A stretch of 64,000 bases of DNA from Ascidiella aspersa. Lineage: Eukaryota. The DNA lies in contig OZ004612.1 of the NCBI GenBank assembly GCA_963924565.1, positions 12,400,001 to 12,464,000 on the forward strand. The letters are read 5' to 3'. Below the pieces are notes generated by a model, which did no database searches, was not told the DNA's origin, and was given only the letters and a program-made list of their open reading frames with translations. Shown piece after piece: positions 24,501 to 64,000 of the stretch; within the stretch, counting starts at the first letter, position 1; each line of letters opens with the position of its first letter. Made by a program: the position numbers and the translations under genes.

Positions 24501-27500
24501 CAAACTAAAAGGTGTTTTAACTTACATAAAGTGGATCTAATCGCTGGGCTTCTTCAAGTAGCTCTCGTTCATGCAAAGCCCGAAGCAGTAGTTCTTTTTC
24601 CAACTGAGGATCATGCTTGAGCTAGAACATTTTTGAGAATTGCATTACAACGTGTAGTGAAGTAGATCGACAGCATCTTGATTAAGACGTTTCGATACGA
24701 ACTTGTATCATCTTCAGTTAGTGTGACGTACAAGTTCGTATCGAAACGTCTTAATCAAGATGCTGTCGAGCTACTCGAGCTTTTTGGCTTTGAAATTTAT
24801 TATTAAGCTACATTACAGATCCGTGCATAGTGTACCCAAACGTGTAGTGAAATTATCAATTACACTTGAAATAAAAAGTTCTAAAAATGCGCTAAACGAA
24901 ATCTTTGATGACGGACCACTTATGTTACAAAATAGGTTTGTTAGTCCACGAAAAAATCAGTTGAAAATGTGATTTTTTGACAAAAAAAAAATACAATAGC
25001 TGCAATATTTTCAGTTAGTTTAAATTATTAACATATGTCAGGTAAATAAAAAATCGGTAAAGGTATCCGTATCACTTGACAAAAACATAAAATTCGAACA
25101 TCAGTAGCGGTCCAAAAAACATTTAAAAAAGGTGCACACATGAAAACCTACCAGATCTAACAAAACCTAATATTTTCAACAGCGTGTGGTAATATACTAC
25201 AAGAATTTTTTCATACAACAATAAATTAGAAAACTCAATACTTCGGCTCTCAGAACAATAAACATTATTATCATTGGCGCTGTTGCGATTACAACTTATC
25301 GACTCACATATTCCTGCAGCAAGATATCGTCCTTTATCCCGGCGTAATCCTGCAAAGTGTCAAGGCCAAGAAGATCCATGAGAGGGTCGCCAGTTCCAAC
25401 CTTGGGCTTTTCCAAAGCACCAGGAGCCTTTGTAGCATTTGCCAGGGCGGGGTCCAGTCCGAGGCGCTGCAACAACGCCGCTTCTATTGCTTCCTTGTCC
25501 AGGGTTTGTTGGTCCTTTGCTGGAGGCTGATCCTTACTTCCACCTGGAGCTTGTTGGTCCGGTTGATTCTTATCAGCACCCTCTGCTATTGGCAAGTTAG
25601 CTGGCAGCTCACCGCTTTAAAATAAATTTCAGCTTTTTTTCTAATCTTCTCTTAATTGTATTTAAATATCACAAGTGAAGGTTGACTTGTTATTACGTTA
25701 TTTTCAATGCAATCAATAAACTTTGTTAAAAAAAATACTACAGAATTGAACGCTACAAATCCAATCACTTTAGGTCAGTGCTTCCGAACGGATGGCTCGC
25801 GATCTATTTCAGGTGGGTCGTAAAGCTATTTCAGGTGGGTCGCAAGGCATTTCTAAATGTTACAGATTTCTATTTGATCAGGAAATTATTGCATTATCAT
25901 TACGTAAAATAAATATGTACAATTAGAAGTGGTGTGTCGCATAACTATTTCAGTCTGTACGCCAGAAGTAAAGATGCAGGTTTTATGTAACTGTTAATCT
26001 TAGTTCCAATCAGTTCCATTTTAAATTATTGCTAAACAGGGGTTAATGTAATTTATTTGAACTCTCTAATTTTGTTGGATTCTTTTTATAGTCACAAAAT
26101 GGATATTTTTGAGCTTTATCATTCATTTGTTTTTTATTCGTTTGGTCCAATACTGGTAGCTCATTGTGGGTCACACAATAAACTTGCATTAAAAGTGGGT
26201 CGCGAACTGAACAAGGTTGGGAAGCACTGCTTTAGGTTACTTGATTTAAATTAAATACAATTGCTTTTTGATTTGGCAATACCTGGCACGAGTTTGTTTG
26301 ACTATTTTGACAGCAGACAGTATGTTCTTTAGATCGAGACTACTGAGCGATTTTGCCTTCTCCAAAACAGCACTTGTGGTAACCGATGCAGGCGACTTGT
26401 CAGCAGAAGTGATTGGCTTGGCCGAAGAATCACTCACTTCAAAAGAAAAATTGTGAAGATAAATAAATAAATAAACGTTTTGCAGAAAATTAAGCTCACT
26501 GTTATAAAAACATCATGTAGTTAGCTATCACAATGGTACATCTTTAATGTTGTGAATCGGTGGTTTGTTTTATGGCCATAAAGAGCTTAATACAATAAAC
26601 AAAATAATACATATAAGACTATTTTTAGACTTTGTTTCTTATTGCAGAACCTGTGACATGTTTTTCACACAATTCAGGACCCCTGCAGTTAAATTGTGGA
26701 AACAGAGGCAATTTTTTTATCAGGCCAGTTTAAATTCAGCGACAGGAACTGAATATTGACAGAAATTATTGGTAAACCTATATTTATTAGCCTATCTTTA
26801 TACTTTTAACCCAGTTTTATGCCGCTATTAAGCTCCTGTTGATTTTGACTTTTGTTTTATATTAAATGTACACTGTTGAATTTGTTTGGTCAAGATCGAT
26901 CCCATCAATTTTTGCAGTGTAAAGTCTTTTTAACAATTTCAGAAGCTTCAAAAGTGTGATAGTATTTAATTATATAACTAATCCTTTTTTGTGATTAATA
27001 CTTTGTGTCTAGCCTAGTTATTGTTAAGGTGAAACATTTAAATCTAACTGAGAATACTGGTATGTATGTGAGTGACTAAGAAACATGGTTTTATTGATTT
27101 ATGCCAATGTACATTATTAATGTGGCTCTTTTGAGTTCAAATTAAAAAATGTGGTTCTTGGTCTCTTACTGGTTGTTCACAACTATTTATGCCTTTGTAC
27201 TTTAGGTTATGCAAGTATATATCTTTATTGTTGGTAAGTCTATACATATATATATATATATATATATACTTATGCGTTTATCACAATAATCTACCTTTTG
27301 GTTGCTTGATAGCTTGTAGGTGTTCCTGAAGCTTCTTTAAATTGTCACCCTTAAAGAGTGGATTGTTTTGTAAAACTTCAGTCAAATTGGGTTTGCCAAA
27401 CCCAATCCCTTGTTCTCTTCCAAGTGATGGACGATCTGGCACAGATGGGCCTGCACTTCTTTCCCTGTCTCCTGAAGACACGGAGCTGCTCCGATCCAGA

Positions 27501-60800: not shown

Positions 60801-63487
60801 ATTCAGCAGTATAAAGGTATCAATAACATGGTTTTCTATTAAAATATTTTTTATTGATAAACTTATGTTAAAGTTTATGTTGGTAACAAAATTGACTTAC
60901 AGAGGTATGTTTCTTATACTATACTCTCATAACACTATGCAACATTTTTGGCTAAACTTTTGACCATCCAATCAGATACTAAGTATCTTTTTACTCAGTT
61001 AAATAATACCTGATCACAGCTATAGGTTCTAATCTAATACTTCTAATGAAGTATATTGGCATTGCGAGTATCATGCAGGAATTAAAGCTCTGAACAACAC
61101 TTTGATAATTTTTTTAACTACTGACGAAATTGAACATGGAAAAGAATCGGTGAGTAATGATTTGTAAAAGTGTAGCATGTGTTTTGCATTTCAGTTCTAT
61201 CAAAGGTAGGTGTTTCAATGCTTTAAATGCCTGTGCCAAAATGAATGTGTGCTTAAAATGCAGTATATACTTAACACAGTCTAAACTGCAGATCTAAACA
61301 TTGTAGCGAAATAAGTACACACCTGTTGCGACTCCATTAACAATTCCTTGAACTGTGTTTTCAGTTCAAAGCGCCGCTGCTTGGCCTCCAGCTCCATCCG
61401 GTGGTTCTGGAAAATCAATTCGGCCTCTGCAGTTTGCAGAAGCTCAAAGGGAATCCTACGATCCTCCATTGACTTCATGTGCTCAGATTCATACCAGGGT
61501 GGATTGTGGTCTTTTCTCTCCAGCATTATTATCCAACTAAAAGCAAAATGGCTCGTTATGGTTTCAACAATTTGCTAATACAGTAATATTAATACCATGT
61601 CTTATTGGAAGGAATAAAAAAACTTTTATAAAGTTACACAAGGTAATGGTAAATTTTGTTTTATCGTTGAGAAGCTGTGTTGCAGTAAAATAAATGTAAC
61701 TGGCAAACTTGGTATGTTTTTGAATTTTACCCTGTACTCTGTATTTCAACTAATAACGTGCGTCTGGTGGTCTATATTATCTCACCTAATTACAAAAAGG
61801 CATAACATTTCTATGCAGTAGTGCAAGCGGAATGTTAAAACTGATTTCAGAGACAGCCAGACATAAATGCCAATAATTAAACATTTCTAATGAGTAAATA
61901 TTCAACCAATATATACATAATTGATTTTTCAACAGAGGTAAAGTCGTTAAAATAAATTTACCATTTCCATGTGTCACTGAAATCACCGGAGGACAAAAAT
62001 AGACAGAAAAAACACTAGCTGTCATATTTTGCCCCCAGGGCAAGGTGTCATAAAATAAAGATGTAACAGCAACGATAATAAGAACATTATCACTGTATAC
62101 CACACTTCTCACTGTTATGGAATAGAAACATTCAAACAAAACTTAATGCATGCAATGCAACCTGTGGAGTGATTGCAAAACATAAAAAAGCACAGCGATT
62201 AAAAAAGAGGGCTAATAGTCAGAAAAATGCAAACAGAACATAACTAACTAATCTGTCAAACAATTTAGCCACTTTGTAAACCTGTTTTTATTGTTTTGTA
62301 TATTAAAAAAATAAACTAACATAAGTTTAATGGTGAAAATAACGACCCAAATAGACGTAAAAAGCGACGTGCTTTATTGTTCAAACGTTTCGGCAAATGC
62401 TCATGCCATCATCAGTGATTAAACAATAAAGCATGTCGCTTTTTACGTCTATTTGGGCCATTATTTTCACCATTAAACTTATGAACAGATCTGTATAAAA
62501 ATAGTGTTCCAAACTGACATACTTTTTAAACTTTGGACTTTCAGTCATGATTGTGCGGGTTTCATTCCATGTAGGTCTTATGCATCGAGCATCAGGCAGA
62601 ATAATTTTTAGTGCTCTTGGAAGGTAGCGAAGGTATTCGCCTTGCAGTTTTAGGCGGTATTCATCTTTCAGCCGAATGACATGCTTGCGGAAAATCTTTG
62701 AAGCTGCATTTGTGCCTGCATCGCCAAAAAACTCAATTTTAGGTGTTGAACTAGAAACAGTATGTCTACCAACTGCTTAAATTTAACAAAAAAAATAATT
62801 CATACTGTCAAGTTTTTGTAAGGTTTGGAATCACTGTTATGATTAACTTTTCTGTTTGAGATCAACTTTTCATCATACAATCCTACCTTCCAGCTCAATA
62901 TATCGGATATACTGTGGCTCATCTTCAAGAGTTTTGCGAGCCACCTGCCAAGACTCTTTGTAATTGGCCACTTTGTTTTCAAGAAGCTTCTCCAGCTGCT
63001 CTTTGGCGTCCTTAAGAATGTCTCTCCTAACCAGGGCAGCATCCTCGAATGATATAATCTAGTTGGGTTGAAAAGAAAAACAAATGAAGAGAAATAATAG
63101 TTAACATTCATATATTCATTTTATTGTATATATTTTTTAGAGCACATGTTTTCCAGCAAATAAGGAAGTTGCAGCCCCAATTTGATTAAGGCAATTAAAT
63201 GCAAGACACAGCAAAATTCAGTTCACTAAGCAAACCTTTGATTTGGACCGAGTTGTCTTGTCAATTAGCTGGGCAAGATAGAGGAATGCAAGGGTGACAT
63301 TAATATTCTCTGATGCAGAGGTTTCAATGACAGCAAGTCCACTGCCCTTCTTTCCAACAGCAGTTGCCGCAAACTTCTCCACTTCATGTATAAAAGCGGG
63401 AACTGCTTCATCGCATTTCGTCAGGGCAACGACGATTGGTTTTTTGGTCTTGGCAATGTAATGGTAGCAGTTTTGCACGAATTTTAC
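36808..63487 (-). CDS. ARHGAP35: p190 Rho GTPase-activating protein (ARHGAP35/ARHGAP5-like), 5'-partial, 24 exons in window
   Basis: Exons (minus): 63487-63236, 63058-62887, 62715-62523, 61536-61323, 59847-59740, 59610-59486, 59196-58923, 58521-58361, 57642-57522, 57254-56987, 56375-56113, 55515-55256, 54567-54456, 53916-53739, 52183-52116, 51679-51530, 50887-50676, 50258-50039, 49701-49552, 46518-46332, 44378-44301, 40395-40258, 39543-39438, 36991-36808. N-terminal GTPase motifs ([22 protein letters not shown]), FF domains ([18 protein letters not shown]), pseudoGTPase segments, RhoGAP domain ([44 protein letters not shown]). Cannot be assigned to A or B paralogue. Confidence 0.92.
43132..43660. 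repeat. Diverged tandem duplication (about 320-bp period) in p190 intron
   Basis: TAGATTTGCCAGCCGCTGAAAAATAT..TGTAGTAAAA..AAGGGTTGTTTG..ATTATAAAGCAGTGA..AAAAAACAATTGT occurs at about 43132 and 43451. Confidence 0.8.
52458..52780. repeat. Tandem duplication (about 168-bp period) in p190 intron
   Basis: TAGTATC.TTGAAGATGGTCAAACTCAATAT..AATTTAACATAGATTGTACATAGATAGTAAACATGTTTCACTGCATTTTCTATA..TTGTTTCAGAGCACTAG twice. Confidence 0.85.
57674..58158. mobile_element. hAT (Charlie/Buster-type) MITE in p190 intron
   Basis: Perfect 16-bp TIR CAGTGGTCGGCAAACT / AGTTTGCCGACCACTG, perfect 8-bp TSD GTTTAGGT (57666-57673, 58159-58166). Confidence 0.9.
62324..62510 (+). mobile_element. Foldback mini-retroelement (Penelope/retrozyme-like) in p190 RhoGAP intron
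   Basis: 11-bp direct repeat AAACTAACATA (62313-62323) / AAACTGACATA (62511-62521); 62-bp inverted arms 62320-62381 / 62422-62483 (3 mismatches); hammerhead core in the 40-nt loop; 3' tail ACAGATCTGTATAAAAATAGTGTTCC. Confidence 0.8.
62381..62418 (-). ncRNA. Minimal type I hammerhead ribozyme core (HHR-2)
   Basis: Minus strand reads UCA-CUGAUGA-U-GGCA-UGAGCAUU-UGCC-GAAAC-GUU^UGA: conserved core, 4-bp helix II, palindromic AACGUU helix III, NUH site GUU, 3-bp helix I. Confidence 0.75.
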
Positions 63488-64000
63488 CTGAAAATCAAAC
63501 ATATTTTACTTGAAATATATATTTACTAGCATTTAGTTAATGGTATAAAGCCCTGTATTGCAGCTACAACTGCCAAATCTTAATATACAATGTATTATGT
63601 ATGATATTTATACAACTCAAAAGTACAATGTTCCAGGATATTTTAGACAAACTGGGTATTCAGTATTTCAATTTATAAGGAGGAAAAGTTAATAATTAAA
63701 GAGAGCAAACAGTCCAAGGCGACTGCAAATCTGTTATTGCCAGGTTTACACCATTATACCACTTTTATAATGCAACAGAAGCAAATTACTTTTATTTGTT
63801 TATTTGTCTGTTACATACTTAAAGTGGACAAGTTGCATGATAGATTATTTCTATATTATCGCACAGTTTATCATATACAAATATCTAATTGATATTTTTG
63901 GACTATACAGTTTTAAAATCATATTTAAACTTTAAAGATTTGTATTTAATGAAACAAAATCTGGTTAAACTGAAAGCAAAATCTGATTAAGCAAACTGTT

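What the first reader, a model, noticed from the sequence alone, without database searches (positions are those of the whole stretch)
62313..62523. HHR-2 element inserted into a splice donor, with its direct copy starting at the ribozyme cleavage site
Seen: the right TSD copy (62511-62521) is intron positions +2 to +12 of the p190 donor (GTATGTCAGTTT on minus), so the element landed at the 5' splice site. The ribozyme sits in the 40-nt loop of a 62-bp hairpin and its predicted cut is about 139 nt into the intron. The plus-strand copy begins at 62420 with TAAACAATAAA, matching the post-cleavage sequence TGAACAATAAA with one mismatch. Inference: the reverse-transcribed template was the ribozyme 3' cleavage product, a footprint of ribozyme processing in the retrotransposition cycle. 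The hairpin arms could also extend the weak 3-bp helix I and allow co-transcriptional intron cleavage.
Basis: partly seen in the sequence, partly recalled or inferred. Interest (0 to 1): 0.8.

Follow-up and report, generated by a model that had tools for sequence, protein, structure and literature searches.

The report
Penelope-type hammerhead hairpin insertion in intron
This is an ordinary, dead copy of a very abundant sea-squirt mini-retroelement of the Penelope type that carries a minimal hammerhead ribozyme motif. It landed 12 bases inside an intron of the p190 RhoGAP gene without harming splicing, and the match between its inner junction and the ribozyme cut site is a coincidence.

Summary
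There is a 65-nt-arm hairpin. A minimal type-I hammerhead (HHR) motif sits on the minus strand, with its predicted cut at 62384|62383. An 11-nt target-site duplication (TSD, 10/11) has its right copy at intron positions +2 to +12, and RNA reads confirm that splice donor.

The element is one of at least 466 copies of a non-autonomous element of about 335 nt with the insertion architecture of Penelope-like elements (PLEs). Each insertion has a 5'-truncated copy carrying a roughly 27-nt 3' tail (copy A). It is usually joined 5'-to-5' to an inverted, tail-less, 5'-truncated copy (copy B).

In 95 unbiased insertions (166 inner 5' ends), none ends at the cut site (+1). Seven lie within -3 to +3, against 7.9 expected. 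Ends pile up at -38 and -36, an initiator-like site 31 nt downstream of a TATA box, so templates kept the ribozyme uncleaved. A second family (HHR-1) shows the same pattern.

The motif meets the published criteria for PLE minimal hammerheads, which are nearly inactive as monomers. Earlier follow-ups in this scan reached the same PLE reading on other DNA of this genome. It is a known kind and of low interest.

The parts
62313..62323 (.). Left copy of the target-site duplication, AAACTAACATA
   Evidence: Read. It matches 62511-62521 in 10 of 11 positions. The family-wide TSD pattern is shown.
62324..62419 (-). Copy B: an inverted, tail-less, 5'-truncated copy of the element, spanning unit positions -36 to +64 relative to the cut site. 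It contains the complete minimal hammerhead and ends 23 nt short of the unit's 3' end.
   Evidence: BLAST to the 335-nt reference unit gives ref 213-312 at 97% identity on the minus strand. The class with the HHR only in the tail-less copy is the commonest composite class, 33 of 71.
62384..62415 (-). Minimal type-I hammerhead core: CUGAUGA, an unpaired U, helix II GGCA/UGCC with an 8-nt loop, GAAA, a palindromic ACGU in place of helix III, and U17. The predicted cut is at 62384|62383.
   Evidence: Read directly. It fits the min-HHR criteria of PMC4209133. No Rfam hammerhead hit. The monomer fold is unremarkable, z = -0.97.
62420..62510 (+). Copy A: a tail-bearing, 5'-truncated copy, starting at unit position +3 (or +1 with one mismatch) and running to the 3' end.
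   Evidence: BLAST to the reference unit gives ref 251-326 on the plus strand. The alignment then breaks at a 4-5-nt A insertion in the tail.
62484..62510 (+). The 3' tail, AACAGATCTGTATAAAAATAGTGTTCC, a decayed form of the family tail. It is present at only one end of the insertion.
   Evidence: The generic tail pattern occurs 903 times in the genome (control 0) in two main variants. The family-specific tail occurs 466 times. B copies lack the last 20-33 nt.
62511..62521 (.). Right copy of the TSD, AAACTGACATA, which is intron positions +2 to +12 on the minus strand
   Evidence: Read. The splice joint 61536|62523 places G+1 at 62522.
61537..62522 (-). Host intron of 986 nt in the p190 RhoGAP gene. 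It is spliced with GT..AG despite the insertion.
   Evidence: Seven RNA reads with 6 start positions, plus a transcript contig, join 61536 to 62523. Read depth is zero in the unique parts of the intron.
62523..62714 (-). Upstream exon of p190 RhoGAP (end of the RhoGAP-FF1 domain)
   Evidence: Transcript contig piece 62523-62714. PF16512 match, E = 2.6e-7, on this exon alone.

Best explanation
The 187-bp element (62324-62510) is a dead-on-arrival insertion of a non-autonomous retroelement, presumably mobilised in trans by the reverse transcriptase and GIY-YIG endonuclease of a Penelope-like element (PLE).

The source unit is about 335 nt long. It carries a TATA box and an initiator-like start 4-6 nt upstream of a minimal hammerhead. 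The predicted cut site lies 87 nt from the 3' end, and the last 27 nt or so form a tail.

How the insertion formed (inferred):
1. The endonuclease made staggered nicks, which explains the 11-nt TSD.
2. One nick primed cDNA from the tail end of the RNA, giving copy A.
3. The other nick primed a second cDNA about 23-30 nt inside the 3' end, giving copy B.
4. Both cDNAs stopped short, and the two were joined 5'-to-5'.

Here B ran to -36, the usual 5' end of the RNA, and so kept the ribozyme. A stopped at +1 to +3. The joined product is therefore a hairpin whose arms are the shared +3 to +64 region and whose loop is the ribozyme core.

The coincidence with the cut site has no mechanistic meaning. 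The ribozyme was uncleaved in the templates that were copied, and the copy is inert in the intron.

Shown: the family, its architecture, the junction statistics, the TSDs and the splicing. Inferred: the double-priming order, the promoter and start-site reading, and the identity of the PLE partner.
For: Family size:
- At least 695 BLAST candidates.
- 327 hits to the HHR 3' half and 466 hits to the tail, with controls of 0.

Architecture:
- Canonical copies have the HHR about 97 nt upstream of the tail on the same strand.
- Long copies define a 335-nt unit.
- Of 95 unbiased tail-anchored insertions, 71 are back-to-back pairs. Inner junctions range from -248 to +52, with 1-8 nt overlaps or fillers, and the B outer ends lack 20-33 nt.
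- TSD mode is 12-13 nt.
- This matches the published PLE layout: an inverted 5'-truncated copy plus a 30-40-bp tail at one end (PMC8557442) and the 34-37-bp 3' repeat of Penelope (PMC2377424).

Ribozyme motif:
- Autonomous GIY-YIG PLEs of this genome carry their own min-HHRs. In the L045 family the cut site is about 60 nt from the 3' end, or about 90 nt with its optional 30-nt tail. In L154 the 3' end was not mapped.

Junction census:
- No pile-up at the cut site in two families.
- Pile-ups at -38 and -36 lie in TCATATC, 31 nt downstream of TATATAAA.
- In the HHR-1 family the pile-up is at (C)ACATTAA, 30 nt downstream of TTATAAG.

Host gene: normal splicing across the insertion.
Against: - No autonomous PLE with the matching tail was found. 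The two PLE 3' ends examined (L045 family, L154) have different tails.
- The start-site reading rests on motif spacing and junction statistics only, with no cap or RACE data.
- The RNA-seq depth, about 45x from 6% of one run, cannot exclude rare cleavage.
- A minor junction cluster at +6 and +7 (11 of 166 ends) is unexplained.
- No Rfam hammerhead model recognises the motif.
Confidence: 0.88

Rival explanations
1. One reading: copy A (62420-62510) was reverse-transcribed from the ribozyme's 3' cleavage product, so its 5' end marks self-cleavage in the retrotransposition cycle.
For: In this copy the arm can be read as starting at +1 (TAAACAATAAA against TGAACAATAAA). One further copy starts exactly at +1 (C4:32000940). 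A minor cluster of ends lies 5-6 nt downstream of the site.
Against: No end lies at +1 among 166 in the unbiased sample, and -3 to +3 is at background level. In the HHR-1 family, with a better GUC site, 1 of about 95 ends is at +1. The dominant 5' ends at -38 and -36 retain the whole ribozyme. The strict alignment of the window copy starts at +3. Minimal hammerheads are nearly inactive, even as dimers, in vitro (PMC4209133).
Confidence: 0.06
2. The hairpin arose by snap-back: a single cDNA folded back on itself and primed its own copying. Two independently primed cDNAs were not involved.
For: A few copies are perfect palindromes centred on the self-complementary AAACGTTT (L080, with an 8-nt overlap). 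Some fillers are templated from the element's own 3' region (L037/L153).
Against: Snap-back predicts that both arms share the same outer end. In fact the B arm nearly always lacks the last 20-33 nt. A and B inner ends vary independently, and one arm often extends far beyond the other. Each end of the pair abuts a TSD copy.
Confidence: 0.08
3. The element is a functional intronic ribozyme or hairpin that cleaves the p190 RhoGAP pre-mRNA or tunes use of the adjacent donor. The 62-bp arms would stabilise the 3-bp helix I.
For: The pre-mRNA strand is the ribozyme-sense strand. The arms do extend helix I, and the core is not masked in this copy.
Against: Helix III cannot form in a monomer, because it would be an A-U pair closing a 2-nt loop. 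The donor is used normally, and no RNA ends or loose ends map to 62383/62384. The copy is one of hundreds of decaying insertions (94% arm identity, a mutated TSD and an insertion in the tail), with no sign of selection. Element reads come from other copies on both strands.
Confidence: 0.03
4. The element is a foldback or MITE-type DNA transposon, for example Mutator-like with 9-11-bp TSDs and long terminal inverted repeats.
For: Long inverted arms and a TSD of about 11 bp.
Against: The termini are not inverted repeats of each other, because one end has the 27-nt tail and the other does not. 24 of 95 insertions are single 5'-truncated copies with no inverted arm. Inner junctions differ from copy to copy, and TSD length varies.
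Confidence: 0.01

Closest known systems
Minimal hammerhead ribozymes of Penelope-like elements (Cervera & de la Pena 2014, PMC4209133)
   Same: Type-I topology with CUGANGA and GAAA boxes. [quoted passage not shown] Hundreds to thousands of mostly single, truncated copies per genome, some as pairs on opposite strands.
   Different: Tunicates are not mentioned in that paper's main text. Here the motif sits in a short non-autonomous unit with its own TATA and initiator-like motifs. Helix II is only 4 bp, against the 7-8 bp described for Schistosoma.
Penelope-like element insertion architecture (Evgen'ev & Arkhipova 2005; Craig et al. 2021, PMC8557442; Schostak et al. 2008, PMC2377424)
   Same: Heavy 5' truncation, an inverted 5'-truncated copy abutting the 5' end, a roughly 30-nt tail at one end only, TSDs, and the HHR near the 3' end.
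   Different: The unit has no RT or GIY-YIG ORF, so it is non-autonomous, and the partner PLE was not identified. D. virilis Penelope has a TATA-less internal promoter, whereas these families have a TATA box 30-31 nt upstream of the inferred start.
Metazoan non-LTR retrozymes (Cervera & de la Pena 2020, PMC7229834)
   Same: Small (170-400 nt), AT-rich, non-coding elements with a type-I HHR. They are retro-mobilised in trans and have TSDs longer than 4 bp.
   Different: Retrozymes are tandem arrays with canonical HHRs that have loop-loop contacts, and they give abundant circular RNAs. These copies are dispersed singles or back-to-back pairs with the minimal HHR. Circular RNA was not tested.
HDV-like ribozymes at the 5' end of R2 and other non-LTR retrotransposons (Eickbush & Eickbush 2010; cited in PMC4209133; details from memory)
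   Different: An HDV-like ribozyme cuts upstream of itself and stays on the RNA. A type-I hammerhead cuts downstream of its core and would remove itself. Here the junctions do not coincide with the cut site.
Conserved intronic hammerheads of amniotes (HH9/HH10; de la Pena & Garcia-Robles 2010; from memory and Rfam family names)
   Same: A hammerhead motif lying in the sense orientation in an intron of a host gene.
   Different: Those are single-copy, ultraconserved, canonical and active ribozymes recognised by Rfam models. This is a decaying repeat copy with no Rfam hit.

Membership tests
PLE-type minimal hammerhead (min-HHR) | Conserved core boxes C3-U-G-A-N-G-A9 and G12-A-A14, with A15.1-U16.1 and H17 not G | tested here: met
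   CUGAUGA at 62415-62409, GAAA at 62391-62388, U16.1 at 62385 and U17 at 62384. The cores are kept in most family copies.
PLE-type minimal hammerhead (min-HHR) | An unpaired nucleotide between A9 and G10.1, and a G10.1-C11.1 pair closing helix II | tested here: met
   U at 62408, with G 62407 pairing to C 62392. The same arrangement occurs with different helix sequences in HHR-1, the L045 PLE family, L154 and the L042 family.
PLE-type minimal hammerhead (min-HHR) | Helix III reduced to a palindromic 15.2-16.2 / loop 3, implying action as a dimer | tested here: met
   A-CG-U (ACGU) here. The palindrome is AGCU in the L045 family and AUGCAU in L154.
PLE-type minimal hammerhead (min-HHR) | Self-cleavage at the predicted site | not testable with these tools
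   There is no pile of RNA ends at 62383/62384 in RNA-seq, and junction statistics argue that templates were uncleaved. No biochemical assay was possible.
Rfam hammerhead families (Hammerhead_1, _3, _II, HH9, HH10) | A covariance-model score at or above the gathering threshold | tested here: not met
   No hammerhead hit at E<=1 on 9 kb or at E<=10 on 121 nt. The only matches were generic hairpin (miRNA-precursor) models below threshold.
Penelope-like element (autonomous) | A single ORF with telomerase-like RT and GIY-YIG endonuclease | tested here: not met
   The full unit is about 335 nt with no ORF. The 2857-bp-spaced copies have no long ORF. GIY-YIG PLEs do exist elsewhere in the genome.
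Penelope-like element (insertion signature; non-autonomous derivative) | 5' truncation, an inverted 5'-truncated copy at the 5' end, a 30-40-bp tail at one end, TSDs, and the HHR near the 3' end | tested here: met
   71 of 95 insertions are back-to-back pairs. The tail-less arm lacks 20-33 nt. TSD mode is 12-13 nt. The cut site lies 87 nt from the 3' end.
Penelope-like element (insertion signature; non-autonomous derivative) | A 3' end shared with an autonomous partner | tested here: inconclusive
   The two PLE 3' ends examined have different tails.
Metazoan retrozyme | Head-to-tail tandem repeats, each with an HHR, giving unit-length linear and circular RNA | tested here: not met
   Copies are dispersed singles or inverted pairs. 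The only regular spacings (2857 bp) are segmental repeats. Circular RNA was not tested.
Foldback / MITE DNA transposon | Identical terminal inverted repeats at both ends and a TSD of fixed length | tested here: not met
   The ends are asymmetric (tail at one end only), TSD length varies and solo copies exist.

The most novel reading that the evidence does not exclude
The minimal hammerhead is not a processing ribozyme here. Instead it is the 5'-terminal module of a roughly 125-nt RNA that starts at the TATA/initiator-driven site. Its palindromic helix III (ACGU) would hold two template RNAs together as a dimer. That would explain why about three quarters of insertions are back-to-back double copies and why the tail-less partner so often runs exactly to the RNA 5' end. 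A weaker variant is that the minor junction cluster at +5 to +7 is a trace of a minority of ribozyme-cleaved templates. Both are speculative. The data only show that templates were uncleaved, that 5' ends cluster at the inferred start, and that paired insertions dominate.
Probability: 0.08. Interest if true: 0.6.

Novelty: new member of a known kind. Interest (0 to 1): 0.15.

Why it matters
For the finding as given, very little. It is one decaying copy of an abundant repeat in an intron that is spliced normally.

The family-level by-product has modest value. The role of hammerheads in endonuclease-bearing Penelope-like elements is still called unclear (PMC8557442). Here, the junction record of two sea-squirt families gives a natural experiment. 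Retrotransposed RNAs began just upstream of the ribozyme and were not cut by it. This argues against 5'-end processing as the motif's job in these families. It also points to a compact mobile unit made of a promoter, the hammerhead and the tail.

Tried and rejected
- Rfam scans on 9 kb at E<=1 and on 121 nt at E<=10 gave no hammerhead hit, only sub-threshold miRNA-hairpin matches that reflect the long stem.
- The first 30 BLAST hits looked as if all copies shared the window's layout, and as if two copies (L013, L017) were "flip/flop" inversions of the loop. This was a selection bias of the query. The tail-anchored sample showed independent junctions in every copy, so flip/flop inversion was dropped.
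- Copies spaced 2857 bp apart on contig 5 were suspected to be the repeats flanking a full PLE. No ORF longer than 175 aa was found, so they are segmental repeats.
- The partner PLE was sought through GIY-YIG (PF01541) hits. The L045-L054 family and L154 have their own min-HHRs but different tails.
35-position patterns were used instead.
- Some +6 junction calls proved to be internal deletions or subfamily indels (for example L111 and L132). The +6/+7 cluster shrinks but does not vanish.
- The exons of p190 RhoGAP were searched one by one.
Full report
**1. What is in the window**

Positions 62320-62384 and 62419-62483 are inverted repeats of 65 nt, 94% complementary, separated by 34 nt. As RNA, the minus strand folds at -103.5 kcal/mol, z = -19.6 against shuffles.

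The loop of the minus strand reads as follows:
- CUGAUGA (62415-62409)
- U (62408)
- GGCA (62407-62404)
- an 8-nt loop
- UGCC (62395-62392)
- GAAA (62391-62388)
- CG, then U (62385) and U (62384)
- then UGAAC...

Helix I is 3 bp, followed by a small internal loop and then the long arms.

AAACTAACATA (62313-62323) and AAACTGACATA (62511-62521) flank the element.

**2. The host gene and the donor**

Four minus-strand exon pieces were searched separately in Pfam. Two of them match PF16512, the FF domain of p190 RhoGAPs (E = 1.1e-12 and 2.6e-7). A third weakly matches Ras-type GTPases.

Raw RNA-seq reads of the same species join 61536 to 62523 with GT..AG on the minus strand (7 reads, 6 start positions). 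A transcript contig shows the same exon chain. This fixes four things:
- the intron is 61537-62522;
- G+1 is 62522;
- the right TSD copy is exactly +2 to +12;
- the element starts at +13, and the predicted cut lies after +139.

The unique parts of the intron have zero RNA depth, and the donor is used normally.

RNA over the element (about 20-27x on each strand) carries the family-consensus letters at 62345, 62369 and 62460. It runs on into unrelated flanks in 84% of reads, so it comes from other copies. No place where many molecules begin or end was reported.

**3. The family**

The element has at least 695 BLAST candidates in its own 308-Mb genome. An earlier scan note says the genome is from a sea squirt.

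The 3' half of the ribozyme occurs 327 times (up to 2 mismatches) and the 3' tail 466 times (up to 3 mismatches). Reversed-pattern controls gave 0.

A generic tail pattern occurs 903 times in two main variants. One belongs to this family. The other belongs to the family of the window's second element, HHR-1 (24622-24851). HHR-1 has the same layout, a 13-nt TSD and a GUC cut site.

In canonical copies the ribozyme lies about 97 nt upstream of the tail on the same strand. The longest copies define a unit of about 335 nt with no ORF.

**4. Architecture of insertions**

I fetched 99 copies anchored only on an exact tail match, so the sample is unbiased with respect to everything upstream. Segmental duplicates were removed, leaving 95. 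Each was aligned to the 335-nt unit.
- 71 are back-to-back pairs: a tail-bearing, 5'-truncated copy A joined 5'-to-5' to an inverted, 5'-truncated copy B.
- 24 are single truncated copies.
- B nearly always lacks the last 20-33 nt (mode 29), which is the tail.
- The A/B junctions differ from copy to copy, with 1-8 nt overlaps or fillers of 1 to about 100 nt. Some fillers are templated from the element itself.
- 57 of 95 insertions have an exact flanking repeat of 9 nt or more (mode 12-13). The maximum is 8 when flanks are paired at random.

This is the insertion structure published for Penelope-like elements: strong 5' truncation, an inverted 5'-truncated copy at the 5' end, and a 30-40-bp tail at one end only (PMC8557442; also the 34-37-bp 3' repeat of Penelope, PMC2377424).

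The window copy has B from -36 to +64 and A from +3 (or +1 with one mismatch) to the tail. Its class, with the ribozyme complete only in B, is the commonest (33 of 71).

**5. The ribozyme motif**

Rfam models do not see the motif, and the monomer fold is unremarkable. It nevertheless meets every sequence criterion given for PLE minimal hammerheads:
- both core boxes;
- a G10.1-C11.1 pair;
- a palindromic 15.2-16.2 instead of a helix III (PMC4209133).

The same plan recurs with different helix sequences elsewhere in the genome:
- HHR-1: GAUAC/GUAUC with ACGU.
- A 98-99% identical, probably young GIY-YIG PLE family: GCAC/GUGC with AGCU. Its cut site lies about 60 nt from the 3' end, with an optional 30-nt tail.
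- A second PLE: GCC/GGC with AUGCAU.
- A further family in L042.

That paper found no single-motif cleavage and only weak dimer cleavage in vitro.

**6.

They do not.
- Of 166 inner 5' ends in the unbiased sample, none is at +1. Seven lie within -3 to +3, against 7.9 expected from the local density.
- A second sample, anchored at +12 to +25, has one end at +1 among about 65 non-redundant copies.
- In the HHR-1 family, about 95 non-redundant copies anchored at +6 to +19 give one end at +1.

The significant peaks are at -38 and -36 (11 ends each, P about 1e-7). Smaller ones are at -13, +6 and +7.

Position -38 is the A of TCATATC, which fits the initiator consensus YYANWYY. It lies 31 nt downstream of the first T of TATATAAA.

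In HHR-1, about a quarter of 100 listed copies begin at (C)ACATTAA, 7-8 nt upstream of CUGAAGA. That lies inside TCACATT, and a TTATAAG box sits 30 nt upstream.

Two unrelated sequences with the same geometry make it likely that these peaks are full-length cDNA ends at a Pol II start site. This is an inference, since no cap data exist. On that reading the copied RNAs carried an intact, uncleaved ribozyme at their extreme 5' end.

The window's A junction at +1 to +3 is one ordinary draw from a broad distribution. The hairpin arms "starting at the cut site" follow from B ending at the usual -36 and A happening to end there.

**7. Function in the intron**

The pre-mRNA strand is ribozyme-sense, and the arms do prolong helix I. 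Three points argue against any activity:
- Helix III would be one A-U pair closing a 2-nt loop, which cannot form. Cleavage would need a second RNA to pair through ACGU.
- Splicing is normal, and no RNA ends map to the site.
- The copy is decaying: arm identity is 94%, the TSD has a mismatch, and the tail carries an insertion of several A residues.

I rate co-transcriptional cleavage as very unlikely.

**8. Verdict**

The retroelement reading is right. The cleavage-product reading is refuted by its own criterion, and the splice-site placement is incidental.

This is a new member (sea squirt, non-autonomous) of a known kind. Earlier follow-ups of this scan reached the same PLE reading on four other stretches of this genome. 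I consulted them only after my own analysis.

The unexplained remainder is the small +5 to +7 junction cluster. It lies next to an AAUAAA and just 3' of helix I, so it could be a reverse-transcriptase pause before the folded motif, a microhomology preference, or a trace of cleaved templates.

Noticed in passing
window 24622-24851: The second element of the window (HHR-1) has the same back-to-back PLE layout. It has a 13-nt TSD (AACGTGTAGTGAA), a min-HHR on the minus strand (CUGAAGA-U-GAUAC..GUAUC-GAAA-CG-UC|) and a tail related to the HHR-2 tail. Its family has at least 1036 ribozyme cores in the genome.
   Followed up: partly
L045-L054 (e.g. L045:1120-1560, minus strand): A GIY-YIG PLE family whose copies are 97-99% identical, so probably recently active. 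It has its own min-HHR about 60 nt from the 3' end. A 30-nt tail is present in some copies (L046, L050, L051, L054) and absent in others (L045, L048). Inverted partial copies lie next to each other.
   Followed up: partly
L154:462-520: A second PLE lineage (816-aa open frame with GIY-YIG) carries a min-HHR with a 5-bp helix I, GCC/GGC as helix II and a palindromic AUGCAU helix III.
   Followed up: no
L042:135-200 (+) and L042:4288-4350 (-): A further min-HHR family (CUGAAGA/CUGACGA-A-GG(C/G)GGC..GUUGCC-GAAA-CG-UU|GGUUAAC), found as two copies about 4 kb apart on opposite strands.
   Followed up: no
G000:C5:2657805-2675381 and 2725635-2728519 (L031, L032): HHR-2 copies recur at 2857-bp spacing with no ORF longer than 175 aa between them. 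This looks like a segmental tandem repeat that captured a copy, not a full PLE.
   Followed up: partly
unit positions +6 to +11 (window 62378-62373, minus strand): A canonical AAUAAA lies just after the predicted cut site on the sense strand. The minor cluster of 5' junctions at +5 to +7 sits at its edge. The cause of that cluster is unknown.
   Followed up: partly
L080 (G000:C1:35231696-35232486): This insertion is a perfect palindrome whose centre is the self-complementary AAACGTTT of the ribozyme (8-nt overlap of the two arms). It is the one clear candidate for snap-back priming.
   Followed up: no
L037 / L153 junction (G000:C4:32509150-32509900): The filler between the two arms (AATGGTGAAAATAAT) is a piece of the element's own 3' region, which suggests template switching during joining.
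   Followed up: no
window 62253-62576: The repeat family is represented in RNA-seq on both strands at similar depth, mostly as read-through from unrelated flanks. One particular copy (L040, G000:C4:22221500-22222350) contributes a distinct set of 10 reads.
   Followed up: no
window 61320-63490 (run X3): Run X3, with no library type on record, behaves like a transcriptome. One 1382-nt contig holds four spliced p190 RhoGAP exons.
   Followed up: no
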